From the sequence record MW373745.1: a DNA stretch of 64,000 nt. One strand, 5' to 3'. Made by a program: the position numbers and the translations under genes. Each line of letters opens with the position of its first letter. Within the stretch, counting starts at the first letter, position 1. This document shows, in pieces, positions 3,790-63,993 of this stretch. The notes under the pieces were generated by a model. That model was not told the origin of the DNA and searched no databases. It worked only from the letters and a program-made list of their open reading frames with translations.

Positions 3790-4938
3790 CTATTGAATAT
3801 CAGTATCCTTGAATCTTGATAAAATCAATTTTGTAATATAAAATTGTGAACTTTCTATTTTATCTATAAACCCAGTTAAAATATACTCACCAGAAATTTT
3901 AGTGTCTCCTTCTTGTGTTTCATTAGTATTTTCGTTAGATTTAAATAATACTTTGTATTTTGTGAATATTTCTGGTGCCTTAACAACTCCAGGTACTACT
4001 AATTCTAACTTAGAATAATCTAAAAACGATTTATAAGTATCAGCAAAAATATTATCATCGTACAAATATTCTTGAGCTTGATATTCAAAACCATCGTGAT
4101 CTTGAGATTCTACTGGAACATCGAAATCTAAATCTTCAAGATTAATTTTCATAACTTTCATTGTTTTAGTAGCTTTATCAAATGCGATTATTTGTGATTT
4201 CGGTAATTTCAGAGCTTGGTTTGTGTTTATAATCTTCCTAGATAAAATATCATAAGGGTTGTTAGGATCTTTTTTAAAATCATCATATTGTATATTTTGA
4301 AGTTTTAAATTATTTGGTTTGAGTTCTTTATAAGGTTTCATAATAATTTTTTGTTTATCTTGAAATAATATCAATCCTTGTCTATCACATTCTTCAAATA
4401 TGAAATCCAATACAGATTTTCGTGAAGTTAAAACGAAGTTTTCAATTACGATGTTGCTAGATAATTCCAATTTAACAGAATCTGGATTATATTTTAATTT
4501 TGGTTTAATATAAGTATCATATATATCTTTAAAAATATCTGAAAGTTTTTTATTTTTATATGTTTTAGCTATATATAATTTACTAAACAAATAAGATATT
4601 AAATCTTGACCTTGTATTGTAAAACTGGATTTATCAGTTGTTTGAGTTTTATTATTTTTAACAACTTGAAACTCTCTTCTATAGTAACCTTCACTAGCAT
4701 CTAATATAAAAGGAATAAATCGCATATCGCCGGATTGATCTAAATAGTATTGTAAATCCGTGGTACCATTGACTGTAAAATAAGACAAGATGATAAAACC
4801 ATTGAATGAGATTTCACCAGATTTTGTTTCTCCAGTTTTTAATTCAAGTGATTTACTTGATTTATTATTAAGAATAGATAAAGTAAAATCTTTGACATCA
4901 CAAGCGTGAGAAAATAGACTTTGAGTTCCCGGATTCAT
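3790..4938 (-). CDS. Probable baseplate hub protein (T4 gp27-like fold)
   Basis: Size, KTYKNKKLSDIF and C-terminal ISGEYILTGFIDKI...TKLILSR pattern; sits in a structural operon. Confidence 0.5.
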   Translation of the reverse strand: MNPGTQSLFSHACDVKDFTLSILNNKSSKSLELKTGETKSGEISFNGFIILSYFTVNGTTDLQYYLDQSGDMRFIPFILDASEGYYRREFQVVKNNKTQTTDKSSFTIQGQDLISYLFSKLYIAKTYKNKKLSDIFKDIYDTYIKPKLKYNPDSVKLELSSNIVIENFVLTSRKSVLDFIFEECDRQGLILFQDKQKIIMKPYKELKPNNLKLQNIQYDDFKKDPNNPYDILSRKIINTNQALKLPKSQIIAFDKATKTMKVMKINLEDLDFDVPVESQDHDGFEYQAQEYLYDDNIFADTYKSFLDYSKLELVVPGVVKAPEIFTKYKVLFKSNENTNETQEGDTKISGEYILTGFIDKIESSQFYITKLILSRFKDTDIQ

Positions 4939-5700: not shown

Positions 5701-8700
5701 ATGGACAGCACAGATAATTCTAAAGTTACAAGTATTGAAACAAATCAATATATAAAAAATCCAAAATATACTACAAAGGAAGCTATTGATAAATTTGTTC
5801 ACCTATTGATCCTGGGTAGATACACTGAAAAAGATTTATCAGATGCTTTGAACTATTGCTTAATACGTAGTACAGAAAGTTTTGACAGCATAGATTCTAT
5901 AAAAAAAGCTATAGAAGAACTTAAGAAAGATTCAGAAGCTTTTAAAATATTCATAGATAATACAAATAAACTTTTAGATGCTATCCAAGATATTAATAAA
6001 GAACAAACTGCTGAAATTGATAAAATTAATGAATTCTTAAAAACAGCAGTAACTTTAGATACTGAACAGACTATTGTAGGAACTAAAACATTTAATAAGA
6101 TTTATGTTCCAAATCCTACAGAATCTAAACAAGCTGCTAACGCTCAGTATGTTATAGATTATGTTAAAGATCAATTAAGTAAAACTATTGGAGATTTAAA
6201 TAATTTAAAAACTGAATCTAAAGATTTAATTATTAATGCTATTAACGAAGTTCTTGACAATTTAAATGCTTATAAAGAAACTATAAATGAAACTGCTATT
6301 AATCAAATGATTGATACTAAGTTAAATCCATTAATAGAAAGAATCACGACAATTGAATCTACTGCGGATTACACCAAAGAATTAGCAGAAGCTAATAAGC
6401 AAGCTATTGAAGATTTAAATACAAAAGTAGTTGATAATACTAGTGATATAACGGATATCAATAGAAGACTTGAAGAAGCTGTTTTCTATAGTAAAATTGA
6501 TGATACTCGCAAAACTATACAACTTAAAAATTATGATAGCATTTCCGGTGTTAGTACTACTGGTGAAGGTATCAATATTGCTATGGTTTCTAAATGGGAT
6601 AAAGTAGATTTAGGATCTACCCAAATTCCTATTAACTTAAATGGGTCAGAAACCAGACCAACTTATAACGATTCTAAAGAAATAGCTTTAATGGATGATG
6701 TTAAGTTGAAAGCAGATGCTAGCAATGTTTATAATAAATCTGAAATTGATACTAAATTAGATACTAAAGCAGATTCAAATACAGTTTATAATAAAGAAGA
6801 TTCTGACGCTAGATTTGTTAGTTTAACTGAGAATCAAAACATTCAAGGCAATAAAGTTATAGAAGGTATTTGGGAATTTAATGGAATATTGTCTAAACCA
6901 AAACAATTAGCAACTACCGAATATGTGGTAAATTATGCTAAAACATATGCTAACCAAAAAGTCGGAGATTTGGCAAGTCTTAAAACAGAAGCTAAAGATA
7001 CAGCAGTGTCTGCTATCAACGAATTATTTGATAAGATTGAATCTGGTAATACAGATGAGCCAGTTGATACTTATACAAAACAAGAAATAGATGCTAAATT
7101 AGAAACTAAAGCAGATGTTGACAATGTTTATAATAAATCTGAAATTGATTCAAAACTTGATCTTAAAGCAGACGCTGGCAGTGTCTATAACAAATCAGAG
7201 ATTGATCATAAATTTGAAAACATAACTATTGATGATATTAATTATGCGAAGTTAGGTGAGGAAAATACTTTTATTCAAGAACAAAACATAAAACAAGTAA
7301 ATATAAGTGATGAACCTACACTAGATACCCATGTAATTACTTTAAAATATTTTAAAGATAATTCTAGTGGTGGTATTTCTCCAGCTGATTATGTAACCAA
7401 GACTGAATTTACAAGTGGTATTAATAACAAAGCTGATAAAAATCATACACACGTTGTAGCTGATATAACAGATTTAAATTTAGATAGACTTGCTACAAAA
7501 GAAGAAACATATACTAAACAAGAAATAGATAATAAAATAGATGCAATAGTACCACCTGAAATTGACTTAACTCATTATGCAAAGAAAGATGCAGCTAATA
7601 TTTTTACAAAAGCTAATACTTTTACAGAAGCACCTTCGGTAGAAGTAGATGCAACACTAGATAATCACGTTATTAGAAAAAAACAATTTGACAATAGCAT
7701 AAAAGAAATAAATGATAAAGTTAAATCTGTTGTTGGTGATTTAAATTCATTAAATAATGAAGTTTCTAAAGATAATTTAGTTAATGCTATAAATAGTGTG
7801 GATGATAAGTTCAAAACAACGGCTAAAACTAATGAATCAAATACATTTACAGGGGATCAAACTTATTTAGACAATATTTTACTAGAATCTGTTCCTTCTG
7901 AAAGAAATCACGCAGTTAATTTGGGATATATTTTAGACAATCCTGGAGGTATAAAACTCCCTGATCATACAGCACTTACACAGAATTCTGTTACAGAAAT
8001 AACTTTTGGATATGCAAATCCAGTATCATATTCTGCACAAACATTAAAAAATGTATTCTTAAAAGACATTATAGGTAATGATTATAAAGCTATTATGGCA
8101 GATAATAAGTCTTTTACAGTAAGCCCTTCAGAAGAAACAGTTGTAATATTATCTAGAGTAGATTATTTAAACAATATAGATTTTAAGTTTGATATTACTA
8201 AAACTTCAGAGCAACTTAAAGAGTATGAGCTTAAAGAAGGTGAAGTAAGAGTTATATTATCTTATGATACTGTTTCTGTTTATAGTAACGGTTACGGATA
8301 TGGAGCTATGTTTTCTAGAAACGCTAATAAAAAAGACGGAGATTTAATATATGATTATTATTTTGGAAGTCAAAATGATATAACAAATAATAGAAAAGTA
8401 TCTATAAAAATAGATAAACTTGGCATTAATACTCCGGATATTGTAAGTATATCTATGACCACAAATGGTTCAGAAAAACTTACAGTTAAAACTGATGAAC
8501 TAAATCCTATAGAAAACATTTATGATTCTGCAGATATGACTTATATTCATACTCCTGTAAGCAAAACTGTAGGAGATGTTCTGTATAGTAATATATCTCA
8601 AGCAATCAAATCAATACATTTATTAGAAAATAATATATGTTCTTTAAAGCCTGCAGATATGGAATTACAACTTGTAAGACTTAAAGAATTTAAACAAACA

Positions 8701-10971
8701 ATAAATAATATATTGCAATCTATGTTTGATGAGAGCCCTGTAACTCTAAAAAATGGAGATTACATAGATGTTTCATTTAGTGGTAGTGCAAGCTATGGAA
8801 CAGGATATTGTGGGTATGTTAATATAAAAGATACTATAAGAGATATTACATATAAAGCTTATAAAGTATCTTCAAATGCTTTTAATACAACTAGTGGAAC
8901 TAAAGTTATTGCAGTTCTCACTTCTGATAATAGTAAAACAAATGTAACTTATTCTGATAGTGTATCAACATTAGAATCTTATGAAGTAGCAGAAAATGAG
9001 ATATTATTAGAAATATCATTTTCAACTGCTAAGCAATATTCTGCTGAATACGGGTATGGAGCTATGTTAGAATATTGGGGTTCTGTATCTGATTTATGTT
9101 ATGATTATTATATGGGTTCAAACCTAGATATGAACTGTCCATTTAAAATAACACTACTAAAGATAGGAAGCTCTGTTAAAGCAGATACTATACAAATAGG
9201 AGCACCTTCGTATTGGGCTAGTTCGTTAGTAATACACTTAAGAAAAAATACAGGAAAAATTATAGACTTTCTAGTTTCAACTGGTAGAAAAGTAATAGGT
9301 AGAGACGGAACTGAGAGTGGTTCTGTATATGATATAGTAGATAAAGCTTTAAAACCTTTAAAAGTATTAACATCTGATGCTCATCAAGAAATAAATGGTG
9401 TAACTAGATTTAATAACAAAGCTTATTTAAACATAGATAGTAATAAAATTACAGATGATAAGCAGATTATAAATAAAGAATATCTTGATGGAAGTATAAA
9501 GACTACAACTAAAGATATCATAAATGAAACTCCTATAATACCTTTTACAAATATTGAAGGTAAGAATACTAAAAATATAAGACTTAAAATATATGCAAAA
9601 ACTGATAGCTCTAGTTACTCCACTGGAGATACAGTTGTAGTAAGTAATCTTAAAGTTAAGCTTAAAGGAGATACTGAGTTTCTTAAACCTGTTGGAGTTG
9701 AAGTTACTGACAGAAGTAATCAAAAAGTAGGATTAAACTTAACAGGAGATGACACTGTATATAAAGATGATATTGCTATTACAGAAACAAAACCTTCAGG
9801 ATTTAATATCTCAAGTATTGATTTATCTAGTGGTAGTAATGCTGTAGCTACAGTAAAAACAAATGGTGTATACGATTATAGTGGAGTATATGAGATTTGT
9901 AATCCTTTCAGAGAGTATAATAAAAAATATTGCGTATTTTTAAGTTCTGATGGATTAAAAAATCCTTACTATCAAGTAACTTTAGAAAGCTCTAAAGAAG
10001 TAGAAAATATACAATTACAATTATATGGAACAAGTGCTACCAATCCTTTATTATACTCTAAAGAATGTATAATAGAAATATACACTGATGATACACTTAT
10101 AAGGTCGTTTAATATAAAAAATAAAAACGATAATACAAATAAACCTATTAATATTAAACTAGATTTTAAAGATGGAGTTTCTTTAATTCCTATAGAAGAG
10201 GCTGTATATAATTTAAAAAATATTATAGATAATAACTCATCTATTTTATCTGGAAATGGAAAACCTTCATTTTCACTAAACCCTAATAAAATAGGCTCTC
10301 TATACTCTGATACAACAAATAAAGCTGTATATATGTGTATAGACAATACTTTTGGTGCTAATAAATGGGTGAATATAGTAACAGGTGATGAAATTAAACC
10401 AAACCTTAGAAAAATAGAAATCACTTGTAATGTAAACTTAAGAAGTGGATATTATGGCGGTTGTATGAGCGGTGTTAAAATAGGATTTGATAACGGGTAT
10501 GCTTCTACAAAACAAATAGTTAAAGGATTAAATAATGGTCAGATATTATGGTCATTAGACGGTTTAGGTAATCTAGCTAGTTATTCTGAAGTAGGTTCTT
10601 TATCTCCTAGTGGTAATGATATCAAAGGTGATGTTACTACTACTGGAATATATAACGACCCTTCATATCATTGTGTTACTAATATATTCAAAGAGTATCT
10701 TGGAAATGCTGACCAGTGTTCATTATGGTCTGACGCTAGCACTAAACAATTAAAAATAACATTAATATCTGAAAAAGTCCCTAATAAAATTACTTATGTA
10801 GGTAACGGACATTATGGTCAGACTTCTGTATCTGATGTAAAAGCTATATGGTATTATGTAAATGATGACGGTATGAAAGTAGAAGAGTCTGTAGATAATG
10901 AACTTGAAGTTAGTGTTAATAGTTCAGAAACAAACGATAGTTCTTATATATATGCGTTCAATATAAATTAG
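5701..10971 (+). CDS. Large tail fibre/receptor-binding-like structural protein (1756 aa)
   Basis: Repeated YNKSEID.KL..KAD and GDL..L......L..AIN motifs, two internal YGYGAM...YDYY.GS modules, C-terminal domain shared with 48660-49943. Confidence 0.65.
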   Translation: MDSTDNSKVTSIETNQYIKNPKYTTKEAIDKFVHLLILGRYTEKDLSDALNYCLIRSTESFDSIDSIKKAIEELKKDSEAFKIFIDNTNKLLDAIQDINKEQTAEIDKINEFLKTAVTLDTEQTIVGTKTFNKIYVPNPTESKQAANAQYVIDYVKDQLSKTIGDLNNLKTESKDLIINAINEVLDNLNAYKETINETAINQMIDTKLNPLIERITTIESTADYTKELAEANKQAIEDLNTKVVDNTSDITDINRRLEEAVFYSKIDDTRKTIQLKNYDSISGVSTTGEGINIAMVSKWDKVDLGSTQIPINLNGSETRPTYNDSKEIALMDDVKLKADASNVYNKSEIDTKLDTKADSNTVYNKEDSDARFVSLTENQNIQGNKVIEGIWEFNGILSKPKQLATTEYVVNYAKTYANQKVGDLASLKTEAKDTAVSAINELFDKIESGNTDEPVDTYTKQEIDAKLETKADVDNVYNKSEIDSKLDLKADAGSVYNKSEIDHKFENITIDDINYAKLGEENTFIQEQNIKQVNISDEPTLDTHVITLKYFKDNSSGGISPADYVTKTEFTSGINNKADKNHTHVVADITDLNLDRLATKEETYTKQEIDNKIDAIVPPEIDLTHYAKKDAANIFTKANTFTEAPSVEVDATLDNHVIRKKQFDNSIKEINDKVKSVVGDLNSLNNEVSKDNLVNAINSVDDKFKTTAKTNESNTFTGDQTYLDNILLESVPSERNHAVNLGYILDNPGGIKLPDHTALTQNSVTEITFGYANPVSYSAQTLKNVFLKDIIGNDYKAIMADNKSFTVSPSEETVVILSRVDYLNNIDFKFDITKTSEQLKEYELKEGEVRVILSYDTVSVYSNGYGYGAMFSRNANKKDGDLIYDYYFGSQNDITNNRKVSIKIDKLGINTPDIVSISMTTNGSEKLTVKTDELNPIENIYDSADMTYIHTPVSKTVGDVLYSNISQAIKSIHLLENNICSLKPADMELQLVRLKEFKQTINNILQSMFDESPVTLKNGDYIDVSFSGSASYGTGYCGYVNIKDTIRDITYKAYKVSSNAFNTTSGTKVIAVLTSDNSKTNVTYSDSVSTLESYEVAENEILLEISFSTAKQYSAEYGYGAMLEYWGSVSDLCYDYYMGSNLDMNCPFKITLLKIGSSVKADTIQIGAPSYWASSLVIHLRKNTGKIIDFLVSTGRKVIGRDGTESGSVYDIVDKALKPLKVLTSDAHQEINGVTRFNNKAYLNIDSNKITDDKQIINKEYLDGSIKTTTKDIINETPIIPFTNIEGKNTKNIRLKIYAKTDSSSYSTGDTVVVSNLKVKLKGDTEFLKPVGVEVTDRSNQKVGLNLTGDDTVYKDDIAITETKPSGFNISSIDLSSGSNAVATVKTNGVYDYSGVYEICNPFREYNKKYCVFLSSDGLKNPYYQVTLESSKEVENIQLQLYGTSATNPLLYSKECIIEIYTDDTLIRSFNIKNKNDNTNKPINIKLDFKDGVSLIPIEEAVYNLKNIIDNNSSILSGNGKPSFSLNPNKIGSLYSDTTNKAVYMCIDNTFGANKWVNIVTGDEIKPNLRKIEITCNVNLRSGYYGGCMSGVKIGFDNGYASTKQIVKGLNNGQILWSLDGLGNLASYSEVGSLSPSGNDIKGDVTTTGIYNDPSYHCVTNIFKEYLGNADQCSLWSDASTKQLKITLISEKVPNKITYVGNGHYGQTSVSDVKAIWYYVNDDGMKVEESVDNELEVSVNSSETNDSSYIYAFNIN

Positions 10972-13572: not shown

Positions 13573-14079
13573 ATGGATATTTCAATTAAAGAAATACAAC
13601 CAAGTCCTGAACAATTGAAGCAATACAAAGCTCAAAGAATAACACAAAGAAAACGCATCGTAAAAGGTGGGTTTGAGCACGTTCTCGTAACTTCGGATTC
13701 TGACTTAGATGGTATTCATATAGGCGCTTTATTGATGGGGTTTATAGAAAGATTTAGGCCGGAATACAAAGGTAGATTTGGTCGGTTTAACACGCCTGTT
13801 AAAATGGTTTTAAAAGGCGAAACTCCTATTAAATGGACTTATGACATCACAGAAGAGTTACCGGTTAAATCCGGTGAAAATGCGAAGTATTTCAAAGGTT
13901 TAGGATCTTGGCAAAAAGAATTATTAGATTTTGTTATTAAGAAGGATGGATTAGAAAATATGATCGATGTCTATGATTTCGATAATATTAATATAATTAA
14001 TGACTTCTTAGGCTCTGAAGAGAGTGATAAAAGAAAGAATTATATTAGAAATCATTCTTTTAGTATAGCAAGTCTGTAA
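13573..14079 (+). CDS. Type II topoisomerase small subunit (TOPRIM, T4 gp60-like)
   Basis: SDSDLDGIHIGALL (DxDxDG) and KYFKGLGS motifs. Confidence 0.8.
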   Translation: MDISIKEIQPSPEQLKQYKAQRITQRKRIVKGGFEHVLVTSDSDLDGIHIGALLMGFIERFRPEYKGRFGRFNTPVKMVLKGETPIKWTYDITEELPVKSGENAKYFKGLGSWQKELLDFVIKKDGLENMIDVYDFDNINIINDFLGSEESDKRKNYIRNHSFSIASL

Positions 14080-15945: not shown

Positions 15946-16063
15946 ATCATTAAGCTTTTAAGCTTTAGCTTATAGTTATTAAACATTTTAAGCTTTAGCT
16001 TTATTTTTTAAAACTTTTATAGCTTTAAATTAAAAATAAATAATTTAAAACTCAGGAATTTTA

Positions 16064-17668
16064 ATGAAAGAATTAGTAGCATCGTGGCTAGCACGCAGAT
16101 TTACAGATAATGACTTTAGAAGTGTTCTCAAAAATGTCGTTCTAAAAGATGGTATAGGTAAAGGCACCAAACGCCCAGATAATGCTACCAATTTTGTGAA
16201 TACAAAAACTGGTGAATTAATAGAACCTACTAAAATTCGTGAATTTATCAAAGCTATGAATGTGGAGGTTCAAACTCGCAATAATTTCTATAAAGGTAAT
16301 ACCGATTATCAAAATGTTTCACAAGTTCCACAAAATGGTGTTTTGCAGGGTTCTGTAGTTTTAAGCACACCTTATACTGCTATGCAGGTTGTTTTAGAAT
16401 CATTTGTAGGTGATGGAATTATAAATTTTGGAACCGCAGTCCAAGCAGATTTTAATCAAGTTAAATTAAATCAAAAATCTTTATTTTTAGCACACGGTAA
16501 TTATTTTGCAAGATTAGAATTTACAGCAAGTGCGATTGCTAATATTTCTGGTGGTGTAAGATTAACTTATAATCAGTCTCAACTTTGGTATGATCAAGGT
16601 AGATCAGAAGTTAATATTAATTATGATGCTTTAACAAAAATATTAGCTCTTGAAGATTTTACTGACGTAGAAATTGGTATAGCAGATTTTAGTTCTAAGA
16701 AAATTAAATGGTTTAATAACGTTAAACTTAAAGCAAGTACATTAAAATTCACAGTTTCTCAAAATACAGAAAACGCTAATAAAACAGTTCAAAAACGTAT
16801 AGTTTCTGGGTATTTAGATTTTACAATTGATCAAACTATTGAAGATACAATATCTGAGAAATTAAAAGGTGCTTTGATCACAGCTGCTAGATTCAATAAA
16901 TTCAAACAATTATTAAATAAAGCTGAAGTTGCTTGTTTATGTGATTGTAATTATTGTACTTGTGATTGTAATTATTGTACTTGTGATTGTAATTATTGTA
17001 CTTGTAATTGCAATTATTGTACTTGTGATTGTAATTATTGTACTTGTGATTGTAATTATTGTACTTGTAATAATAATAAAGAATACACTGATAGGGTTAA
17101 TTATTGGCATGGTGTTGTTTGTACTTGTAATGCGAATATTACTTGCCAAACTCAAGGTCCTGGATATACACCAGTTTATGAAAACAAATATATGACTGAG
17201 TGTTCTTGCCAAGGGGATAGAAGTGTTCCGCAATACAACCAATACGGTCAAATATATGGTTATGCGTGTAGATGTAATGCTAACTGGATTAATTCTGTTA
17301 GACAACACGCTACCGTAACTCAAGTATGTTCTTGTAACGTTGATAAACAATGGACTAAAAATATTACAGGTAAACCAATTTGGGATAAAAAATCTACAGG
17401 TCAAATCGATAATATTGTCAACAACAATACTTCAAATTCACAAACAAGTACTACTGTAAGAGTTTGTGTTTGTGATACAAACGTCACAATAGCTGCACAA
17501 TGTGCTACAAATAGAACAATGGCTTATGTTGATGGGTCAACTGGAAGTCAAGGCGGTTACAGATGTGTTTGCGATATCAACACAAATAGACAAATTGCTT
17601 GTTCTGCTAATAGAGAATATAAATATGTCACTGACTATACTCAATTTCAAAACAAACAATACAATTAA
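16064..17668 (+). CDS. Cys-rich repeat protein, putative radical-SAM-modified virion protein
   Basis: About 290 Cys-free N-terminal residues, then 35 Cys: (CDCNYCT)x6 and six further CxC[DNQ]x[ND] units. Confidence 0.75.
   Translation: MKELVASWLARRFTDNDFRSVLKNVVLKDGIGKGTKRPDNATNFVNTKTGELIEPTKIREFIKAMNVEVQTRNNFYKGNTDYQNVSQVPQNGVLQGSVVLSTPYTAMQVVLESFVGDGIINFGTAVQADFNQVKLNQKSLFLAHGNYFARLEFTASAIANISGGVRLTYNQSQLWYDQGRSEVNINYDALTKILALEDFTDVEIGIADFSSKKIKWFNNVKLKASTLKFTVSQNTENANKTVQKRIVSGYLDFTIDQTIEDTISEKLKGALITAARFNKFKQLLNKAEVACLCDCNYCTCDCNYCTCDCNYCTCNCNYCTCDCNYCTCDCNYCTCNNNKEYTDRVNYWHGVVCTCNANITCQTQGPGYTPVYENKYMTECSCQGDRSVPQYNQYGQIYGYACRCNANWINSVRQHATVTQVCSCNVDKQWTKNITGKPIWDKKSTGQIDNIVNNNTSNSQTSTTVRVCVCDTNVTIAAQCATNRTMAYVDGSTGSQGGYRCVCDINTNRQIACSANREYKYVTDYTQFQNKQYN
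16940..17065 (+). repeat. Six 21-bp tandem coding repeats tgtgattgtaattattgtact
   Basis: Units start at 16940, 16961, 16982, 17003 (variant), 17024 and 17045. Confidence 0.95.
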
Positions 17669-17926
17669 AACTCAATTAACATATAATCAGCTTGAAGTTC
17701 TTAAAAAGAGCTTCAATGCTTTTTAAAAATTTAAGATCAGAGATTTAAAACTAAAGTTTAAATTTTAAAATATTAAAGCATTTTTATATAAAATTATACA
17801 AATAGATATAATTTTATATCAAATATTATATATTCTGGACTTAAAAGTATATTAAACTAAATAAATATAGAAATTATTTTAGAATTTTCAAAAATTGAAA
17901 GTTTTGAAATTTAAATATAATAAAAC

Positions 17927-17961
17927 GAGAAATAAAGAAACTACCAATTTCTTTATTTCTC
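17927..17961. promoter_or_regulatory. Perfect 14-bp inverted repeat upstream of the TnpB-like gene (possible IS left-end hairpin or 5'UTR structure)
   Basis: gagaaataaagaaa-ctaccaa-tttctttatttctc. Confidence 0.6.
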
Positions 17962-17983: not shown

Positions 17984-19402
17984 ATGTCTAAAACTAAAAG
18001 TATTTATAATGAAGAGATACAAAATATTATAACAATCAAGCTAGACTATAAGTCTTCTGATACAGAAAGAATACTTGATTGTATCAAAAACTACAACTCT
18101 CTTTTTAGATCAACATATTCATTTTATCAGCAAGTTCCTGACTTAAAACAAGCAGAAACAACAAGACTTCAATCTAGATTGAATAATATTTTTCTTGATA
18201 AGTGGTTTTTTAACTCAGCTGTTTTTGATGTTAAAAGTTTTAAGAACAAGAAAAAGAAAGATGAAAAAGTTATATTTGGTGGTAAAAAGAATTTCTTTGA
18301 TAGATTAAAAGGAAAAATTTCAAGAGAAGAATACCAACTAAAAAGACTGCTTCCTCTATATAGTGTAGGTGAAGCATCTAAGAATGGAAATAGAAAATCC
18401 CAAATAGAAGATGAAAATACAATAATTTTTAAAGTCTCAAGAAAAGAACATATCACTCTAAAATTAAATGGAACTTCTAAGAGATATAGAGATTATTTGA
18501 ATCAGCTGATTACTTTACAAATAAACAAATCTATACCGATAACCTACAAGCTAGATACCAAATATGTTTATATCAGCTTCGACTTGAATAAACTCAAACA
18601 CAATTTAAAAGTACAAGATAAGATTAAAGACAGAGTATTTGGTATTGATCTAAATCCCAACTACATTGGATATTCAGTAGTAGATTGGAAAAACGATGGA
18701 TCTTATAAAATCATAAAAACGGGTTCTATTTCTTTAAAAGCTCTAAATGATTATGATGATTCTTTAAAAGGACAAGGGTATTCTGGACAAAGTAAAGAAA
18801 GAAAATACATTTCAAATAAAAGAAATCACGAAATCATACAAATAGTCCATCAGCTATCTAAGTTAGCAAATCATTTTGGGTGTGAGATTTTTAGCTTAGA
18901 ATACCTTAATACGAAGCAAGGAGATAAAGAAAAAGGAACTAAGTTCAACAAACTCTGTAATAATCAGTGGTGTAGAAGTCTTTTAGTTTCACAAATAAAG
19001 AAAATGAATTGTCTATACAAGATTAGAACTCTAGAGGTTCAACCTCAATATAGTTCATTTATTGGAAATCTTGTATATAGAGTTCATCAGCTTCCTGATT
19101 ATGTTCTAGCAAGTATAGAAATAGGAAGAAGGGGATATGAATTCTACCATCAATATATCTTAAAAGATAAAAAGATGGAGAAGAATATCATCTTTGGAAA
19201 CTATGAAAAAGATAAAAATCTTTATTATCTATCATTGGAAGAAATCGGTATTAAAGAGTCTTTTAATAGTTTTATGGAGATGTATTCTTTTGTAAAAAAT
19301 TCTAAATTGAGATATAGAGTTTCTCTAGATGATATAGATTCATCTAGAGTTTTCAGGAAACTTTTTATAAAATCTTATACGGAATTTTATAATTTTTTAT
19401 AA
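17984..19402 (+). CDS. tnpB: TnpB-like RuvC nuclease (IS200/IS605/IS607 accessory family), with no adjacent transposase
   Basis: RuvC-I FGIDLNP (D222), RuvC-II SLEYL (E306), EVQPQYSSFIG then PDYVLASIEIGRRG (D372). Confidence 0.75.
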   Translation: MSKTKSIYNEEIQNIITIKLDYKSSDTERILDCIKNYNSLFRSTYSFYQQVPDLKQAETTRLQSRLNNIFLDKWFFNSAVFDVKSFKNKKKKDEKVIFGGKKNFFDRLKGKISREEYQLKRLLPLYSVGEASKNGNRKSQIEDENTIIFKVSRKEHITLKLNGTSKRYRDYLNQLITLQINKSIPITYKLDTKYVYISFDLNKLKHNLKVQDKIKDRVFGIDLNPNYIGYSVVDWKNDGSYKIIKTGSISLKALNDYDDSLKGQGYSGQSKERKYISNKRNHEIIQIVHQLSKLANHFGCEIFSLEYLNTKQGDKEKGTKFNKLCNNQWCRSLLVSQIKKMNCLYKIRTLEVQPQYSSFIGNLVYRVHQLPDYVLASIEIGRRGYEFYHQYILKDKKMEKNIIFGNYEKDKNLYYLSLEEIGIKESFNSFMEMYSFVKNSKLRYRVSLDDIDSSRVFRKLFIKSYTEFYNFL

Positions 19403-21568: not shown

Positions 21569-22738
21569 ATGGAATATTTACCAAAATCTCAAGGACCTAA
21601 AAAACTTTATAATTTTGATATTAATATGACTCAAGCGTGTACACTAAGATGTACATACTGTATTCAAGATTTTAATAAACAAAAATTTGAAAAATTATCA
21701 CCAGAACTTACTAAAAAAATGATAGAAAAGTTTGATTTTCTATTGAATTCAGTAGAATTCAATAAACATTATGATGGTATTAGAATTTCATTCTGGGGTG
21801 GGGAACCCACAACTAACCTAGAAGGTGTTAAAGAGTTTGTAGAATACTATAGACACAACCCAAAAGTTTGTTTCTTTATGTATTCAAATGGTTATAAATA
21901 CAACCACGTTTTTGATTACTTAGAAACATTTAAGTATATGCCAAATGTCGGGTCAGAACCAAAATTCTTGACTCAAATATCTTATGATGGAATGGCAAGT
22001 CACGATTCAGATAGACTTAATTTACAAGGTAAGGGCTCAGCACAACAAGTTAAAGAAACTGTTTTTGAACTAGCAAAAAGAAATATACCTTTTATTGTAC
22101 ATCCTACGATTGCAGCTAAGAATTTCGATAAGATTGCTATTAATTATTTCGAATTTAAAAGAATGTCCGATGTCTTAGGTATTGAACTTAATTATAACCC
22201 TACGATAGACTATATGTCTAAATATGATTTTACAAAAGAACAATTAGAAGCATTGACAAATACTTTAAAAGAAGAATTCTTAAAAATACGTGATGCTGAA
22301 GTTGAGTTCTTTAAAAGAAAAGGATATTTTAATTTTGGTTGGATGAATCCAAATAGAAGTATTTGTACAGCAGGTGATGGCTATTCTGGTATTGAATTGG
22401 ATGGTAAAATGTATGCTTGTCACGGTGTTTTTAGTGAAGAATATAAACCAAATAATGTTTTAAATGATATTAATTTTGAGAATGTAAAATTTACTGAAAC
22501 ATTGATTAAGAGCTCACAAGATCATAGAAAAATATTAAATGAAAATATGCCCAAAGCTTGCCAAGAATGTTTTACACATTATTGTTTAAAATGTAATTCT
22601 ACAAAATTTGGTATTTCTAATAAAGAAACCTACGCAGAAAGATGGACTGATTATAGTTGCCAACCTGGTTTATGTTATATGTTTAAATTCATAGGTAAAT
22701 ATAGAATAGCTTTGATGAAATATATTCAAGCTTCTTAG
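21569..22738 (+). CDS. Radical SAM enzyme with a SPASM-type auxiliary cluster domain
   Basis: CTLRCTYC (CxxxCxxC), FWGGEP, C-terminal CTAG...DGKMYACH...CQECFTHYCLKC...C. Confidence 0.9.
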   Translation: MEYLPKSQGPKKLYNFDINMTQACTLRCTYCIQDFNKQKFEKLSPELTKKMIEKFDFLLNSVEFNKHYDGIRISFWGGEPTTNLEGVKEFVEYYRHNPKVCFFMYSNGYKYNHVFDYLETFKYMPNVGSEPKFLTQISYDGMASHDSDRLNLQGKGSAQQVKETVFELAKRNIPFIVHPTIAAKNFDKIAINYFEFKRMSDVLGIELNYNPTIDYMSKYDFTKEQLEALTNTLKEEFLKIRDAEVEFFKRKGYFNFGWMNPNRSICTAGDGYSGIELDGKMYACHGVFSEEYKPNNVLNDINFENVKFTETLIKSSQDHRKILNENMPKACQECFTHYCLKCNSTKFGISNKETYAERWTDYSCQPGLCYMFKFIGKYRIALMKYIQAS

Positions 22739-22840: not shown

Positions 22841-25800
22841 TTGAGTATAATAAAATCAACTGCTAGGGGTATTAGAGGTACTTATAGAGCAGGCAAAAAT
22901 GCAGTTAATAGTGTTAATTCTGCTTATAATAGTGCTGTTAGTGGTATAAACAAAGTAAATTCTGCTTTAGATCCTATGAATACAGTTAGAAGTGCTACTC
23001 AAAGACTCAATAACTGGATGGATTCGGATTCTAAAGTATCTAAGACAACTCAAAAAAATAATGATTCAATTGTTAGTGAATTAAACAACGTAGCCAATGA
23101 AGTTGTTAGTGCAGCCAAAGCTTTAGATCCTATGAATGCTAGAAAATTAACAGAAATTTCAGAATCTCTTAAAAATATTTCAAAACAAATCTCGGATATT
23201 AAAAAAGGATTAATAGATAATCAAGATACAGAAATAAGACACCAAGGTTTTGATAAAAACGTTCAAAATGTTTCAGAATCTAAAGTAAATGTACCTCAGA
23301 ATAAAAGTTTTTTTGATAAACTTTTAGGTTGGTTAGGAGGTTTATTAGGTATATCGGCAGGTGCTTTATTACCATTATTGGGATCATTAGGAAGTTTTTT
23401 AACAAAGCCTTTAGATTTCATTTTAGATCTATTAAAAGGTGGTATTAATAAATTATGGACTTTATTTGAGCCATTATTAGGCCCTATTATAGACCCTTTA
23501 AAAAATGGATTTGAATTCTTAAAAAATAAATGGAACTCATTAGTAGATTTTATTAATAAAAAAATTAATATTGGTGATAAATGGAAAATCTCAGATAATG
23601 ATAATCCAAAAAATCCAAAATCACCAAAAGTAAGTTCATCTAATCCAGCTAAAGAACAATCTTGGATGTCTAAGAAATGGGATTCTTTTAAAGGTGCTAT
23701 GCAAAATGGATATGATTGGGCTTCACAAAAAGTAGATGATTTAAAATCATATGCTAGTAAGAAATATCAAGATATTAAAAATTCTAAAGTAGGTAAAATT
23801 ATATCTGCAGGATATGATAAATTAAAAGCAGCACAAAAATATATTGTAGAAAAAGCTATTGAAGGATTTGATGCTGTTAAAAATATGGTAAGCTCTGCTT
23901 GGGATTCAGCAGTTAAAGCAGCACAAAAAGGCTTTAATATGCTTAAAAAGTTTGCTTTAGCTCCTATGGAGAAATTTGTTAGTTCAGTAGGTAAGAAACT
24001 ATTTGGAAGTTCTAAGTTATTTTCAGTTCTACCTAGTATACTTGGAAATCTTGAAAAAATAGGAGCAAGATTAGCTGCTAGTGGTGCTAAAATAGCTTCA
24101 AAAGCTTTACCAGGTGTTGGGTTTGCTGTAGGTATATACCAAGCTTGGGATTTCTTTACTCGTGGTAGATGGGTATTGGGTTCAATAGCAGCACTTAGTG
24201 CTTGTATTTCATTATTACCAGGTATTGGTGGGATCATATCTATGTGTTTAGACTTAGGTTTATTTGCTACTGATATTATAACAAGTCCAGATGATGTAGA
24301 TAATCTTAATAAAGAACAAAATGATTTAGTAAATACAGCAAATAAAATGGTTCAAAATAATGATACTGGAGGTATTTTAGAACCAAGTCAAGTAGAAAAA
24401 GATAAAGCACAATCTGGAGTTCAAGATTCAAGTTCTAATTCAAGTTCAAGTAATAAAGGATTAAATGCTAAAGTACTTGATGGTAAATCTGCTAACGATT
24501 TTGCTGCTTCGTATACACCACATAAAGTGGATTCTAACGGAACCGTTATAGCTGCTAAAACAGGTTCTATATATAAAGGTTTGACCTGGGTAGAATCTGA
24601 AAAATATGATGCTGAAAAGCAAGCTTATTTTAAGAAACGTGAAGAAAAAGAAGCACAATTAGATGCGCTTTTTGAACAAGGTCAAAAAGCTATGAATTCT
24701 GGAGATACTGAAACCTTTAATAAATTAGTTACACAAAGAAATAAATTATCTGATGAATTATCTAAAATGAGCTTAGATTCTATCGATTCTAAATATCAAG
24801 CTATTGGACAAGCAAGAATTAAAAAATTGCAAAGCCAAGGAGCTAATGCAGATTTATCGGTATTTAGAACTAATGGAGATTCAAGTACTAGTTCAGGGGG
24901 AACTGATACAAAACCAGATTCTACAAATGCTAGTGCTAGTGTAGCTTCGCAAGCTTCTGGTTCAATCTCTCCGGCGCAAGTTCAAGGAGCTCAATCCACA
25001 GAAGCCCAAGGCTCGAGTTCAGGAGGATCTCCAGGAGCAAGAGCTGCAGCAGAATTCAGTAAAAAATATAACTTAGGAACTAGAGCAACAGGCGCTTGCG
25101 CCAAGTATGTTAGATCTTATTTGATGGCAGCAGGATATCCATTATCTGGTTGGCCAGTAGCAGCTGCAGATTATATAAATTTCTTACCTAAATATGGTTT
25201 TACACCAGTTCAAGGTAGAGCTTCACAAATAAGCCCAGAAGTAGGTGACATTTCAATAACCCAGAGATTTGGAAATCACAAATATGGGCATATTGCTATT
25301 TGGAATGGTTCTAATTGGGTTTCAGATTTTAAACAAAACTCAGTTTCAATTTATAGAGACGTAAATGCTTTCGGTGGGCCGGATGCTAATATAACTATTC
25401 TAAGAGATACTTCAGGTCAAAATCCATCTCAAGAACTTGTAAATCAACAATTATCCAATATGAATAGTTCTTTTAAAGTTGCATTAGGGGGTGGAGGTGC
25501 TAAAGGTGCTGTTTATAGTTTGGATTCTGGAGTTTCAAATGTTGTTACAAATACAGCAGGCGCTGCAGCTAGTGTTATAAGTTCTGGTGTAAGTAGTATC
25601 CAATCTTTTGCTAATGCTAATTCTATTACAACCAGAAAATCTTTAACTCAAATGTATACAGAATCTGGATTAAGTACTAGTTTTGGGTCAAGTTCAGCCC
25701 CACAAGCTGCTAGCCCAGCTGCAAATTCAACACCAAAAGAAACAAAAGCAGATATTAAGCCAGCTTCAAAACCAGTAGCGTCAGTCCCACAAGCTGCTAG

Positions 25801-26404
25801 CCCAGCTGCAAATTCAACACCAAAAGAAACAAAAGCAGATATTAAGCCAGCTTCAAAACCAGTAGCGTCAGCTCCAAAAGCAGTTCCTAAAGCTGCTAGC
25901 TATGGTACACCACACAGAGGTCAATATGATGCAGAAACAATGGAAGACTTCAACAACTTAGGAGATAACTTTAGTAAATCCAAATCACCAATTTCTTTAC
26001 CTGGAGATTCGAAATCTAACGTTCAAACTAACAATGCTGGCTCAGTAGTACCAGTAACTCCTGTAGTTAATATAAAGAATAATTCATCTCCAAGTGATTA
26101 TTCTTGGGCTTCTAAAAACAGTTTTAAAATTGCTAGAATGTTTGGGTTAGATGGCATCAGCGATTACGAAATACTTAATGAAGGTTCAGAATCTGACTTT
26201 TTACAATCTTATGGTATGTCTAAAAGACAAGCAATTCAATCAGCAGGGTTAAACAATACAGTACAAACCAAAGTTGCTAGTAATGTTAAAACAAAAGATG
26301 TGATACCAGCTGTCAATAAAACCCAAATAAATAATACCAATATACAGACTAAAACAAAAGAAACTTCTAATAAAGATTTGACTGATTCTTTTGTTTTGAG
26401 CTAA
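22841..26404 (+). CDS. Tape-measure/baseplate-hub-like protein with a CHAP/NlpC-type peptidoglycan hydrolase domain
   Basis: Long helical Ala/Ser-rich protein; GACAKYVR...GD...YGHIAIWNG..WVSDF (Cys/His dyad); lies upstream of the gp48/gp53-like genes. Confidence 0.65.
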   Translation: MSIIKSTARGIRGTYRAGKNAVNSVNSAYNSAVSGINKVNSALDPMNTVRSATQRLNNWMDSDSKVSKTTQKNNDSIVSELNNVANEVVSAAKALDPMNARKLTEISESLKNISKQISDIKKGLIDNQDTEIRHQGFDKNVQNVSESKVNVPQNKSFFDKLLGWLGGLLGISAGALLPLLGSLGSFLTKPLDFILDLLKGGINKLWTLFEPLLGPIIDPLKNGFEFLKNKWNSLVDFINKKINIGDKWKISDNDNPKNPKSPKVSSSNPAKEQSWMSKKWDSFKGAMQNGYDWASQKVDDLKSYASKKYQDIKNSKVGKIISAGYDKLKAAQKYIVEKAIEGFDAVKNMVSSAWDSAVKAAQKGFNMLKKFALAPMEKFVSSVGKKLFGSSKLFSVLPSILGNLEKIGARLAASGAKIASKALPGVGFAVGIYQAWDFFTRGRWVLGSIAALSACISLLPGIGGIISMCLDLGLFATDIITSPDDVDNLNKEQNDLVNTANKMVQNNDTGGILEPSQVEKDKAQSGVQDSSSNSSSSNKGLNAKVLDGKSANDFAASYTPHKVDSNGTVIAAKTGSIYKGLTWVESEKYDAEKQAYFKKREEKEAQLDALFEQGQKAMNSGDTETFNKLVTQRNKLSDELSKMSLDSIDSKYQAIGQARIKKLQSQGANADLSVFRTNGDSSTSSGGTDTKPDSTNASASVASQASGSISPAQVQGAQSTEAQGSSSGGSPGARAAAEFSKKYNLGTRATGACAKYVRSYLMAAGYPLSGWPVAAADYINFLPKYGFTPVQGRASQISPEVGDISITQRFGNHKYGHIAIWNGSNWVSDFKQNSVSIYRDVNAFGGPDANITILRDTSGQNPSQELVNQQLSNMNSSFKVALGGGGAKGAVYSLDSGVSNVVTNTAGAAASVISSGVSSIQSFANANSITTRKSLTQMYTESGLSTSFGSSSAPQAASPAANSTPKETKADIKPASKPVASVPQAASPAANSTPKETKADIKPASKPVASAPKAVPKAASYGTPHRGQYDAETMEDFNNLGDNFSKSKSPISLPGDSKSNVQTNNAGSVVPVTPVVNIKNNSSPSDYSWASKNSFKIARMFGLDGISDYEILNEGSESDFLQSYGMSKRQAIQSAGLNNTVQTKVASNVKTKDVIPAVNKTQINNTNIQTKTKETSNKDLTDSFVLS
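25699..25871 (+). repeat. 87-bp tandem duplication (PQAASPAANSTPKETKADIKPASKPVAS x2)
   Basis: Units start at 25699 and 25786. Confidence 0.95.
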
Positions 26405-63365: not shown

Positions 63366-63656
63366 ATGTTTAATAAAAAAGATATTATTGTTAATGCAGT
63401 TCCCGTTAAGCTTTTTGCAAGTAATTTAGGTTTGTATGATAATTTTTATAGAAATGTAAATGAGCTTAAAAGTGGTTTTAAAATCAAACAAGTAGGAAAT
63501 AATTTTTTTGTTTTGCTTCCTGATTGGTTTATAAAATTGCTAGAGATAGGATATGATTGTTATGTGATTAAGCCTTATGATGATTTTAAATATGAATTTA
63601 AAGTTGAACTTTCTAAAAAAACTGAAATAGGATTTTACAAAAATGACAATTTATAA
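63366..63656 (+). CDS. Hypothetical protein
   Basis: ORF coupled to the HNH gene. Confidence 0.55.
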   Translation: MFNKKDIIVNAVPVKLFASNLGLYDNFYRNVNELKSGFKIKQVGNNFFVLLPDWFIKLLEIGYDCYVIKPYDDFKYEFKVELSKKTEIGFYKNDNL

Positions 63657-63993
63657 ACTTTGCAAGTGTGGTAAGAAAATACAAACTCATTTAAGAACTT
63701 GTGAAGAATGTGATAAAACTTTTAAGAAAATAGCAAACAAAAGATATGATTGTTTTAAAAGAGACAAAGCAAGTTCAGATTTTTATAACAGCACAGCTTG
63801 GAGAAAATTAAGAAATGCTTTTATAAATAAAAATCCATTTTGTGCGAAGTGTGGAAAGTTTGCAAAAATTATAGATCATATTGTGCCAATTAAACAAGGT
63901 GGCGAGAAACTGAGTGAAGAAAATTTGCAAAGTTTATGCATAGTTTGTCATAATGAAAAGACTAAAAATGAGCTTAAGGGATGGGGTATGTAA
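63643..63993 (+). CDS. HNH endonuclease (cos-packaging associated, HK97 gp74-like)
   Basis: PFCAKCG...IDHIVPIKQGG...NLQSLCIVCHNEKT. Confidence 0.9.
   Translation: MTIYKLCKCGKKIQTHLRTCEECDKTFKKIANKRYDCFKRDKASSDFYNSTAWRKLRNAFINKNPFCAKCGKFAKIIDHIVPIKQGGEKLSEENLQSLCIVCHNEKTKNELKGWGM

What the first reader, a model, noticed from the sequence alone, without database searches (positions are those of the whole stretch)
16064..17668. 534-aa protein with a Cys-free body and a 35-cysteine repeat tail
Seen: no Cys in about the first 290 residues, then CLC-(CDCNYCT)x6-C encoded by 21-bp tandem units, then six spaced units CTCNAN, CSCQGD, CRCNAN, CSCNVD, CVCDTN and CVCDIN. The heptads fit the same CxC[DNQ]x[ND] pattern. 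This resembles a ribosomal-peptide core fused to a large carrier domain rather than a normal folded enzyme. Inference: the tail is crosslinked (thioethers or disulfides) or metal-loaded to form a rigid fibre tip, and heptad number can vary by slippage.
Basis: partly seen in the sequence, partly recalled or inferred. Interest (0 to 1): 0.8.

Follow-up and report, generated by a model that had tools for sequence, protein, structure and literature searches.

The report
Radical-SAM-linked cysteine-repeat phage virion protein
A Campylobacter-phage particle protein carries a strictly conserved cysteine heptad repeat that, in dozens of divergent phage lineages, is encoded beside peptide-crosslinking radical-SAM enzymes, which points to an undescribed, enzyme-matured fibre module.

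Summary
ORF 16064..17668 (534 aa) has 35 Cys, all after residue 290. They lie in six 21-bp-encoded heptads C-x-C-[DN]-C-N-Y and six spaced CxC units. The window is a Campylobacter group II phage (Firehammervirus).

The heptad is a mobile module, not drift. It stays 82-100% identical in relatives that are about 20% identical elsewhere, and both synonymous codons are used. It is almost confined to phage DNA. In 43 of 56 relatives it forms the C-terminal tip, often directly before a self-cleaving S74 tail-fibre chaperone.

The IBB_35 orthologue was detected in purified virions (2.6% coverage).

The key new result is a gene-neighbourhood link. The window's radical-SAM/SPASM gene (21569..22738) has orthologues directly next to heptad genes in many divergent phage contigs, usually with two more radical-SAM genes. 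All three families score best against thioether-forming peptide maturases, but far below family cut-offs.

Best reading (0.55): a virion protein whose Cys module is covalently matured, probably cross-linked, by phage radical-SAM enzymes. The chemistry is inferred, not shown.

Heptad number varies among close relatives (2, 4 or 6).

The "Cys-free body" is not significant (P=0.056).

The "neuraminate lyase" annotation is unsupported.

The parts
16054..16057 (+). AGGA ribosome-binding site, 6 nt before the ATG
   Evidence: read from the sequence
16064..17668 (+). CDS of the 534-aa Cys-repeat protein (PHROG 26958; orthologue of CP220 APL47_gp140, called CPT_0180 in the CP220 paper; IBB_35 gene 3-9; CP21_105; F379_160)
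16064..16870 (+). N-terminal domain, aa 1-269: helices plus a beta sandwich, with no known fold or family
   Evidence: AlphaFold pLDDT about 70-85 for aa 40-290. No Foldseek match below E = 0.05. A profile of the domain finds only 10 clusters among 1.84 billion representatives, and all carry Cys heptads.
16871..16933 (+). pre-array helix, aa 270-290. Positions I272, A274, F277, N278, F280, L284 and N285 match positions enriched before heptad arrays in otherwise unrelated proteins.
   Evidence: A274, N278 and N285 are invariant in A1. Column shares over 131 distinct pre-array segments. Predicted helix 274-289.
16934..17068 (+). heptad array, aa 291-335: six units C-x-C-[DN]-C-N-Y plus C-T-C, encoded by 21-bp tandem repeats
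   Evidence: It is 82-100% identical across relatives that are about 20% identical elsewhere.
17069..17665 (+). C-terminal tail, aa 336-534, with six spaced CxC[DNQ]x[ND] units (nt 17120-17137, 17201-17218, 17267-17284, 17327-17344, 17465-17482, 17564-17581). C353/C355, C422/C424, C468/C470 and C513 are conserved in at least 90% of relatives.
   Evidence: pLDDT below 30.
17692..17716 (+). terminator-like hairpin followed by a T-run, 24 nt after the stop codon
   Evidence: consensus scan only
21569..22738 (+). radical-SAM/SPASM gene ('famA', 389 aa), the proposed maturase partner. It has CxxxCxxC at aa 24-31, GGEP, and seven C-terminal Cys in SPASM-like spacing. There is no room for an N-terminal leader-recognition domain.
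   Evidence: Orthologues lie directly next to heptad genes in L003 (55.6% id, 42-nt gap) and L012 (52% id, 18-nt gap), and close by in L013 and L015. It occurs in the same 15 phage records as the target.

Best explanation
The gene encodes a virion-associated protein of Campylobacter group II phages with four parts: a lineage-specific N-terminal domain, a conserved helix, an array of C-x-C-[DN]-C-N-Y heptads, and a tail of spaced CxC units. The Cys module is proposed to be the substrate of phage-encoded radical-SAM/SPASM enzymes. These are famA at 21569..22738, plus famB and famC elsewhere in the genome. They would modify the module after translation, most probably by intra- or inter-chain thioether cross-links from Cys sulfur to carbons of the neighbouring Asp/Asn/Thr/Tyr. 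The result would be a rigid, covalently stitched fibre segment. The enzymes lack a leader-recognition domain, so they would act on the full-size protein, and the conserved pre-array helix may serve as docking and/or trimerisation element. Shown: the anatomy, purifying selection on the heptad, the gene-neighbourhood link to three radical-SAM families, the near-restriction to phage DNA, S74-chaperone or C-terminal placement in relatives, and one MS detection in virions. Inferred: that the enzymes act on this protein, the type of chemistry, trimeric fibre architecture, and the position in the particle.
For: (1) Heptad conservation. In 71 units from 10 genes, C1, C3, C5 and N6 are invariant and each is written with both synonymous codons, Y7 is 97%, and position 4 is only D or N. 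The array is 82-100% identical where the N-domain and tail are about 20%.
(2) Forward test. 47 IMG/VR stretches hold two consecutive heptads. In most that extend far enough, famA, famB and famC hits lie on the same strand just upstream of the heptad gene or genes, up to four tandem paralogues.
(3) Reverse test. Of 73 famA-positive loci, 45 have an ORF with at least 3 CxC[NDQ]x[NDY] motifs on the same strand within 5 kb, and 14 of these abut famA directly. Only 52 of 4642 ORFs match the motif. Many of the rest have a 10-14-Cys ORF with variant hexads right after famA. The link holds in 18 of 32 famA clusters at 60% identity, or 26 of 32 with the looser criterion.
(4) The partner stays when the N-domain changes: L012/P0016, L013/P0021, L015/P0049 and the Clostridium rectalis locus.
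(5) Among 50,697 phage records, the target and famA match only the same 15 Firehammervirus records. famB and famC match those 15 strongly (45-48% identity) and otherwise only a few unnamed faecal phage records at 22-26% identity.
(6) All three families score best against PapB-type ranthipeptide maturases. Other thioether and peptide maturases (QhpD, SCIFF, CcpM, CefB) and anaerobic sulfatase maturase follow.
(7) Structural role. IBB_35 gene 3-9 is on the virion MS list. Of 56 heptad ORFs, 43 have the array at the C-terminus or directly before an S74-like chaperone.
(8) AlphaFold cannot fold the Cys parts (pLDDT below 30) although it folds the flanking domains. This fits a structure that needs modification, metal or oligomerisation.
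Against: No chemical evidence exists for any modification. All radical-SAM family scores lie far below curated cut-offs: 77.6 bits against 340 for PapB, and the SPASM Pfam hit is 17.1 bits against 21.5. In this phage the cassette is dispersed: famA is 3.9 kb downstream and famB and famC are tens of kb away. These phages carry about 11 radical-SAM genes (PMC2853527), so proximity alone is weaker here than in the relatives. In the more distant full-length clade (L004-L009) the adjacent gene is a different small radical-SAM gene or a protein without the motif, and famA was not seen on those short contigs. Virion detection rests on 2.6% coverage in one study. No fold match supports a fibre for the N-domain.
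Confidence: 0.55

Rival explanations
1. Metal- or iron-sulfur-binding module. The CxCxC heptads of one or three chains would hold metal ions or clusters along the fibre axis, as His-x-His motifs hold iron in the T4 long-tail-fibre tip, or as thiolate clusters do in metallothionein. There would be no covalent modification. The radical-SAM neighbours would reflect shared iron-sulfur handling or an unrelated pathway.
For: CxC-dense sequence with 14% Cys and strictly conserved spacing. AlphaFold gives no structure without ligands. Neighbours are iron-sulfur enzymes.
Against: No metallothionein or metal-binding family hit. A metal site would not by itself explain why N6, Y7 and D/N4 are as invariant as the Cys. 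It would also not explain why three distinct peptide-maturase-like enzymes, rather than cluster-assembly genes, accompany the module.
Confidence: 0.2
2. Plain disulfide-rich structural repeat that oxidises after lysis. The radical-SAM genes nearby would serve other tasks, for example the DNA base modification for which these phages are known.
For: Cys-rich extracellular fibres are often disulfide bonded. Firehammervirus genomes carry about 11 radical-SAM genes of varied function. A queuosine-related phosphoribosyltransferase gene lies between the target and famA.
Against: The same three radical-SAM families follow the heptad module through lineages whose other genes differ. These families resemble peptide maturases, not QueE-type enzymes.
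Confidence: 0.1
3. True RiPP or cofactor precursor. The Cys-rich part would be cut out and released as a small modified peptide or redox cofactor that acts on the host or on competitors, and the large N-domain would be only a carrier.
For: Cys-rich core plus radical-SAM/SPASM genes is the classic RiPP layout. The Clostridium rectalis locus pairs a 148-aa Cys-repeat ORF with a 434-aa radical-SAM ORF directly upstream. Self-cleaving S74 or Hint domains follow the array in some relatives.
Against: No protease, transporter or leader-recognition domain was found near the target. The S74 domain is a tail-fibre folding chaperone whose cleavage leaves the array on the fibre. The protein was found in virions. 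The precursor is 534 aa with a conserved folded N-domain.
Confidence: 0.1
4. N-acetylneuraminate pyruvate lyase, as annotated in the CP21 and vB_CjeM_WX1 records.
For: Only the product names in two GenBank records.
Against: No Pfam, NCBIfam or PDB-sequence match to any lyase or aldolase family. Foldseek found no match below E = 0.05. Other records call it hypothetical.
Confidence: 0.01

Closest known systems
Ranthipeptide/sactipeptide RiPP systems (PapA-PapB freyrasin, SCIFF-ScfB, CcpM Cys-rich peptides)
   Same: A Cys-repeat substrate is encoded beside radical-SAM/SPASM enzymes. PapB is the best-scoring NCBIfam model for famA, famB and famC. Asp/Asn acceptors sit close to Cys in the repeat.
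   Different: Scores are far below family cut-offs. The enzymes have no leader-recognition domain. The substrate is a 170-830-aa phage protein with folded domains, not a short leader-core peptide. There are up to three maturase families per locus, no protease or exporter, and the module is almost restricted to phage DNA.
QhpC-QhpD (gamma subunit of quinohemoprotein amine dehydrogenase, cross-linked by a radical-SAM/SPASM enzyme)
   Same: It is a precedent, from established knowledge, for radical-SAM-installed Cys-to-Asp/Glu thioethers that stay in a functional protein subunit rather than a released peptide. QhpD is among the top NCBIfam hits.
   Different: It is a bacterial periplasmic enzyme subunit with few cross-links. 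It has no repeat array and no link to virions.
Anaerobic sulfatase-maturating enzymes (anSME)
   Same: The architecture matches: radical-SAM core plus SPASM, no leader-binding domain, acting on whole proteins at a Cys. The profile aligns over its full length, 8-344 of 363.
   Different: The score is 60 bits against a cut-off of 349. No sulfatase or its target motif is present.
Endosialidase-type tail fibres and spikes with a C-terminal Peptidase_S74 intramolecular chaperone
   Same: Many heptad proteins carry this chaperone directly after the array: P0049 has heptads at 205-233 and S74 at 234-274, and S234, D235, R237, L238 and K239 are nearly invariant. This ties the module to trimeric fibres.
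   Different: The target itself has no S74 domain. Cys heptads are not a described stalk motif of these fibres.
T4 gp37 / gp12 fibre tips with His-x-His metal sites
   Same: A short repeated liganding motif along a phage fibre. This is an analogy for the metal-binding rival, from established knowledge.
   Different: The ligands are His, not Cys. There is no sequence or fold match and no accessory radical-SAM enzymes.
HK97-type capsid isopeptide cross-links
   Same: Covalent cross-linking that hardens a virion protein.
   Different: The cross-links are autocatalytic Lys-Asn bonds in capsids. No Cys or enzymes are involved.

Membership tests
RiPP precursor with radical-SAM/SPASM maturase (ranthipeptide/sactipeptide type) | Cys-containing core region encoded near a radical-SAM/SPASM enzyme | tested here: met
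   famA lies 3.9 kb downstream in the window and directly adjacent in L003 and L012. The link was found in both search directions in IMG/VR.
RiPP precursor with radical-SAM/SPASM maturase (ranthipeptide/sactipeptide type) | Leader peptide recognised by an RRE (PqqD-like) domain of the maturase | tested here: not met
   The CxxxCxxC motif of famA starts at residue 24. Profiles of RRE-bearing maturases align only from about position 100 onward. No separate RRE gene was found.
RiPP precursor with radical-SAM/SPASM maturase (ranthipeptide/sactipeptide type) | Proteolytic release and export of a small mature peptide | tested here: not met
   There is no protease or transporter gene beside the target. 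The IBB_35 gene appears on the virion protein list, but the table gives only the predicted mass of 60,318 Da, so the size of the detected species is not known.
RiPP precursor with radical-SAM/SPASM maturase (ranthipeptide/sactipeptide type) | Thioether (S-C) cross-links demonstrated chemically | not testable with these tools
   Needs mass spectrometry of the protein.
PapB family (NF047865) / anSME (TIGR03942) / SCIFF maturase (TIGR03974) | Score above the curated cut-off of the model | tested here: not met
   famA scores 77.6 against 340, 60.3 against 349 and 47.2 against 425. famB and famC are also below cut-off.
SPASM-domain radical-SAM enzymes | CxxxCxxC plus a C-terminal seven-Cys motif for auxiliary clusters | tested here: inconclusive
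   The motif spacing is present and invariant in 5 divergent famA members. The Pfam SPASM hit is below cut-off, at 17.1 against 21.5 bits.
Tail fibre/spike with Peptidase_S74 intramolecular chaperone | C-terminal PF13884 domain | tested here: not met
   No Pfam hit in the target. The domain is present in heptad-bearing relatives only.
Virion structural protein | Detected in purified particles | tested here: inconclusive
   IBB_35 gene 3-9 (1605 bp, 60,318 Da; my calculation gives 60,317) is listed in the ESI-MS/MS virion table with 2.6% coverage (PMC3322345 supplement). It is not among the gel bands identified for CP220.
N-acetylneuraminate lyase (DHDPS/NAL family) | Profile or fold match to the TIM-barrel aldolase family | tested here: not met
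Metallothionein-like metal-binding proteins | Family profile match, or metal content | tested here: not met
   No profile match. Metal content is not testable here.

The most novel reading that the evidence does not exclude
The C-x-C-[DN]-C-N-Y array with its preceding helix is a phage-specific structural module. A dedicated set of up to three radical-SAM/SPASM enzymes would stitch it covalently, possibly one enzyme per Cys of the heptad. That would be the first enzyme-installed, RiPP-type cross-linking of virion fibre proteins, and it would be spread across many T4-like and other phages in the environment and the gut.
Probability: 0.4. Interest if true: 0.9.

Novelty: new variant of a known kind. 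Interest (0 to 1): 0.8.

Why it matters
If the inference holds, phages use RiPP-type radical chemistry to build their own particles, not to make antibiotics or cofactors. That would add a new class of post-translational hardening of virion fibres. It would explain some of the unusually many radical-SAM genes in Campylobacter group II phages, noted but unexplained since 2010. It would define three new maturase families with a simple, highly repetitive natural substrate. It would also give an unannotated module (no Pfam, NCBIfam or functional PHROG entry) a testable role. For Campylobacter phages used in biocontrol research, it flags a faster-evolving particle protein (90.6-100% identity among isolates, against 97.7-100% for famA) whose repeat number varies between isolates.

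Tried and rejected
- Sequence searches of the target against Pfam, NCBIfam and PDB: nothing.
- PHROGs: only an unnamed family.
- AlphaFold on a 23-sequence alignment: N-domain of moderate confidence, Cys tail below pLDDT 30.
- Foldseek against PDB and BFVD: no hit below E = 0.05. The weak top hits are tail-tube/Hcp-like proteins of contractile systems (TM about 0.3) and I do not rely on them.
- AlphaFold of an S74-bearing heptad protein: only the chaperone folds.
- Literature: no paper in the held library contains the heptad strings or links phage radical-SAM genes to fibre proteins. The CP220 paper mentions the 21-bp repeat only as a DNA repeat ('RRx').
- I considered that the radical SAM next to the distant clade (L004/L005, 271-275 aa) might be the same enzyme. 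It is not.
- I considered that two- versus three-enzyme loci might match two- versus three-Cys repeats. The truncated loci do not allow a clean test.
- 'Neuraminate lyase' was rejected.
- Non-coding or artefact was rejected: the ORF is conserved, selection acts at the protein level, and there is an MS detection.
Full report
WHAT IS THERE. The ORF 16064..17668 (+) encodes 534 residues. It has an AGGA ribosome-binding site 6 nt upstream and a terminator-like hairpin at 17692-17716. It holds 35 Cys, the first at residue 291. Tandem Repeats Finder reports a 21-bp repeat at 16940-17068 with 6.1 copies and 96% matches. It encodes six heptads C-[LT]-C-[DN]-C-N-Y. Six spaced CxC[DNQ]x[ND] units follow at residues 353, 380, 402, 422, 468 and 501. 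Cys is 0.99% of the window's other long ORFs. So 35 Cys in 244 residues has P = 2.6e-29, while no Cys in 290 residues has P = 0.056 and is unremarkable.

WHERE IT COMES FROM. The protein matches 15 records, all Campylobacter group II phages (Firehammervirus: CJLB-12/13/14, F379, CP21, CP220, CPt10, CP20, IBB_35, CC_R7, WX1), at 90.6-100% identity, and no other record among 50,697 phage records. Upstream neighbours are tail sheath-stabiliser and tail-tube genes, a topoisomerase fragment, gp32 and a GroES-like gene. Downstream lie RNA ligase, a phosphoribosyltransferase, a radical-SAM gene, a large membrane or tape-measure-like protein and baseplate genes. Two records name the protein 'N-acetylneuraminate pyruvate lyase'. 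No profile, sequence or fold search supports that name.

PRIOR MENTIONS. The CP220 paper noted the 21-bp repeat only as a DNA repeat inside a CDS (PMC2853527). In the IBB_35 paper, gene 3-9 (1605 bp, 60,318 Da) is listed among 38 virion proteins found by ESI-MS/MS, with 2.6% coverage (PMC3322345 supplement). My calculated mass for the orthologue is 60,317 Da. This is real but thin evidence that the protein is in the particle.

THE FAMILY. Full-length relatives exist in metagenomes down to 21-27% identity (alignment A1). Region by region, the heptad array stays 82-100% identical when the N-domain and tail have fallen to about 20%. The 21 residues before the array stay at 33-62%. In 71 heptad units from 10 genes, C1, C3, C5 and N6 never change, although both synonymous codons are used for each. 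Y7 is 97%, position 4 is only D or N, and position 2 is mostly T written with four codons. That is purifying selection on the peptide, not only recent slippage.

COPY NUMBER. Copy number does vary in whole units among close relatives. It is 6 in the window, CP220, F379 and IBB_35, 4 in WX1 and P0004, and 2 in P0002. Four of the six units in the window are identical at the DNA level.

THE N-DOMAIN. A profile of the N-domain alone finds only 10 clusters among 1.84 billion representative proteins. Every one of them carries Cys heptads.

THE HEPTAD IS A MOBILE MODULE. The same array occurs in proteins with other architectures. A helix precedes it, with recurrent I(-19), A(-17), hydrophobic(-14), N(-13), hydrophobic(-11), hydrophobic(-7) and N(-6). 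In the target these are I272, A274, F277, N278, F280, L284 and N285. In P0049-type proteins the array (205-233) runs straight into a Peptidase_S74 intramolecular chaperone (234-274). That domain scores above the Pfam cut-off, and S234, D235, R237, L238 and K239 are nearly invariant. AlphaFold folds that chaperone at pLDDT 80-93. In P0039 a Hint domain follows the array.

PLACEMENT AND DISTRIBUTION OF THE ARRAY. Of 56 distinct heptad ORFs, 22 end within 12 residues of the array and 21 continue at once into an S74-like start. Only 5, the Campylobacter type and its nearest relatives, have 100 or more further residues. S74 chaperones are, from established knowledge, the self-cleaving trimerisation aids of tail fibres and spikes, so in most relatives the array would be the mature C-terminal tip of a fibre. 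No Pfam or NCBIfam model covers the repeat. Two consecutive heptads occur in 47 IMG/VR stretches. They occur in only 4 stretches among 185,579 bacterial and archaeal species genomes. Three of those are on MAG contigs: L146 is the T4-like contig of L006, L144 encodes a full-length relative and L143 carries famA- and famC-type ORFs. The fourth is in Clostridium rectalis.

THE RADICAL-SAM LINK (main new result). The window gene 21569..22738 ('famA', 389 aa) has a CxxxCxxC motif at residues 24-31 and a GGEP motif. It also has seven C-terminal Cys in SPASM-like spacing that are invariant across five divergent members.
- Its orthologue (55.6% identity) lies 42 nt upstream of P0011, a 40%-identical relative of the target, in L003.
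- A 52%-identical orthologue lies 18 nt upstream of P0016, which shares with the target only a short N-terminal stretch and the heptads.
- Members at 29-30% identity lie close to P0021 and P0049.
- Two further radical-SAM families travel with them: famB, a second SPASM type, and famC, which has two CxxxCxxC motifs.

FORWARD AND REVERSE TESTS. Forward: in the 47 heptad-bearing IMG/VR stretches, famA, famB and famC hits lie on the same strand just upstream of the heptad gene or genes wherever the stored stretch reaches far enough. The usual order is famA-famB-x-famC-x-heptad gene(s), with up to four tandem paralogues. Reverse: of 73 loci found through famA, 45 have an ORF with at least 3 CxC[NDQ]x[NDY] motifs on the same strand within 5 kb, and 14 of these abut famA directly. 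Only 52 of 4642 ORFs match the motif at all. Many of the remaining loci have a 10-14-Cys ORF with variant hexads immediately after famA, some with an S74 end. Some of those hexads resemble the target's spaced units. The link is seen in 18 of 32 famA clusters at 60% identity, or 26 of 32 with the looser criterion. Even the Clostridium rectalis locus has a radical-SAM ORF directly upstream of its Cys-repeat ORF.

IN FIREHAMMERVIRUS. All three families are present but dispersed. Only famA is in the window. In CP220, famC lies near 84 kb and famB near 16 kb. The target and famA match only the same 15 of 50,697 phage records. famB and famC match those 15 strongly and otherwise only a few unnamed faecal phage records at 22-26% identity.

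WHAT THE ENZYMES RESEMBLE. For famA, famB and famC the best NCBIfam model is the PapB ranthipeptide maturase. Other peptide maturases (nif11-type, QhpD, CcpM, CefB, SCIFF) and anaerobic sulfatase maturase follow. All are far below curated cut-offs. The families are therefore new members of the peptide/protein-modifying SPASM group, not members of a named family. famA has no room for an N-terminal leader-recognition domain. This matches enzymes that act on whole proteins, such as the sulfatase maturases.

STRUCTURE. AlphaFold with 23 sequences gives a moderately confident N-domain (aa 40-290, helices plus beta sandwich) and no structure for aa 293-534. Foldseek finds nothing below E = 0.05. The weak top hits are tube/Hcp-like proteins of contractile systems and carry little weight.

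MECHANISM PROPOSED. The protein is a particle component. Its helix-plus-Cys module is matured by the phage's radical-SAM/SPASM enzymes, most likely by thioether links from Cys to nearby Asp/Asn/Thr/Tyr carbons. That would give a rigid, covalently stitched segment. The C-terminal 199 residues with spaced CxC units extend the same chemistry or serve host contact. The anatomy, the selection, the gene linkage, the phage restriction and the fibre context of relatives are shown. The enzyme-substrate relation, the chemistry, the oligomeric state and the location in the particle are inferred. I put this at 0.55. Rivals are metal or cluster binding without covalent change (0.2), plain disulfides with coincidental neighbours (0.1), and a released RiPP or cofactor (0.1).

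NOVELTY. Cys-rich substrates with radical-SAM/SPASM maturases are a known kind. A phage-restricted module in full-size fibre-type proteins is not described in the libraries or papers I could search. Nor are its three accompanying leader-domain-less maturase families or its S74-chaperone coupling. Hence 'new variant of a known kind'.

DISCLOSURE. While reasoning I recalled from memory three short generic motif definitions: the radical-SAM CxxxCxxC, the spacing of the SPASM seven-Cys motif, and the Ser...Lys dyad at the start of S74 chaperones. For searching loci I built three local profile HMMs of the radical-SAM families from sequences as they stand.

Noticed in passing
window 17984..19402 (+): A 472-aa TnpB-related ORF (weak TIGR01766 hit) is inserted between the target and the RNA ligase gene. 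It is absent at this spot in CP220, WX1 and IBB_35, and it is annotated as two 'putative endonuclease' ORFs in F379. A 35-nt palindrome lies at 17927-17961 just upstream.
   Followed up: partly
window 15949..16027: A tandem repeat of about 30 bp lies in the intergenic region before the target. The IBB_35 record labels the same place a 'polydeoxyadenosyl region'.
   Followed up: no
window 5701..10971 (+): This 1756-aa ORF corresponds to IBB_35 gene 3-16, a 170.8-kDa protein found in virions with 9.9% MS coverage. Its C-terminus resembles a C. jejuni RM1221 protein according to the IBB_35 paper's table. It is a candidate large fibre or host-contact protein.
   Followed up: no
window 3790..4938 (-): This 382-aa ORF has homologues at 24-26% identity a few genes upstream of the Cys-repeat gene in the distant contigs L004, L005 and L006. 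It has no family assignment.
   Followed up: partly
window 63643..63993 (+): This is the second most Cys-dense ORF of the window (9 Cys in 116 aa). By eye it looks like an HNH-type homing endonuclease with zinc-finger Cys pairs, and it is unrelated to the heptad module.
   Followed up: partly
window 24001..26000: G+C rises to 0.364, against about 0.28 elsewhere, inside the 1187-aa ORF 22841..26404. That ORF is annotated as membrane protein or endolysin in relatives.
   Followed up: no
L015 9223-9990 and 10001-10918; L031/L103 (four genes in a row): In environmental phage contigs the heptad genes occur as tandem paralogues. They sit inside islands with up to nine radical-SAM genes plus glycosyltransferase, UDP-glucose dehydrogenase and tryptophan-halogenase-like genes.
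   Followed up: partly
window 13573..14079 (+): A stand-alone 168-aa piece of a type II topoisomerase large subunit, matching only the C-terminal part of the PHROG profile. This suggests a split gene, as reported for these phages.
   Followed up: no
L003 (21.5 kb around P0011): The closest non-Campylobacter-phage relative carries six radical-SAM genes, GTP cyclohydrolase I and a PAAR gene within 21 kb. The Firehammervirus-like gene content therefore extends to uncultured phages.
   Followed up: no
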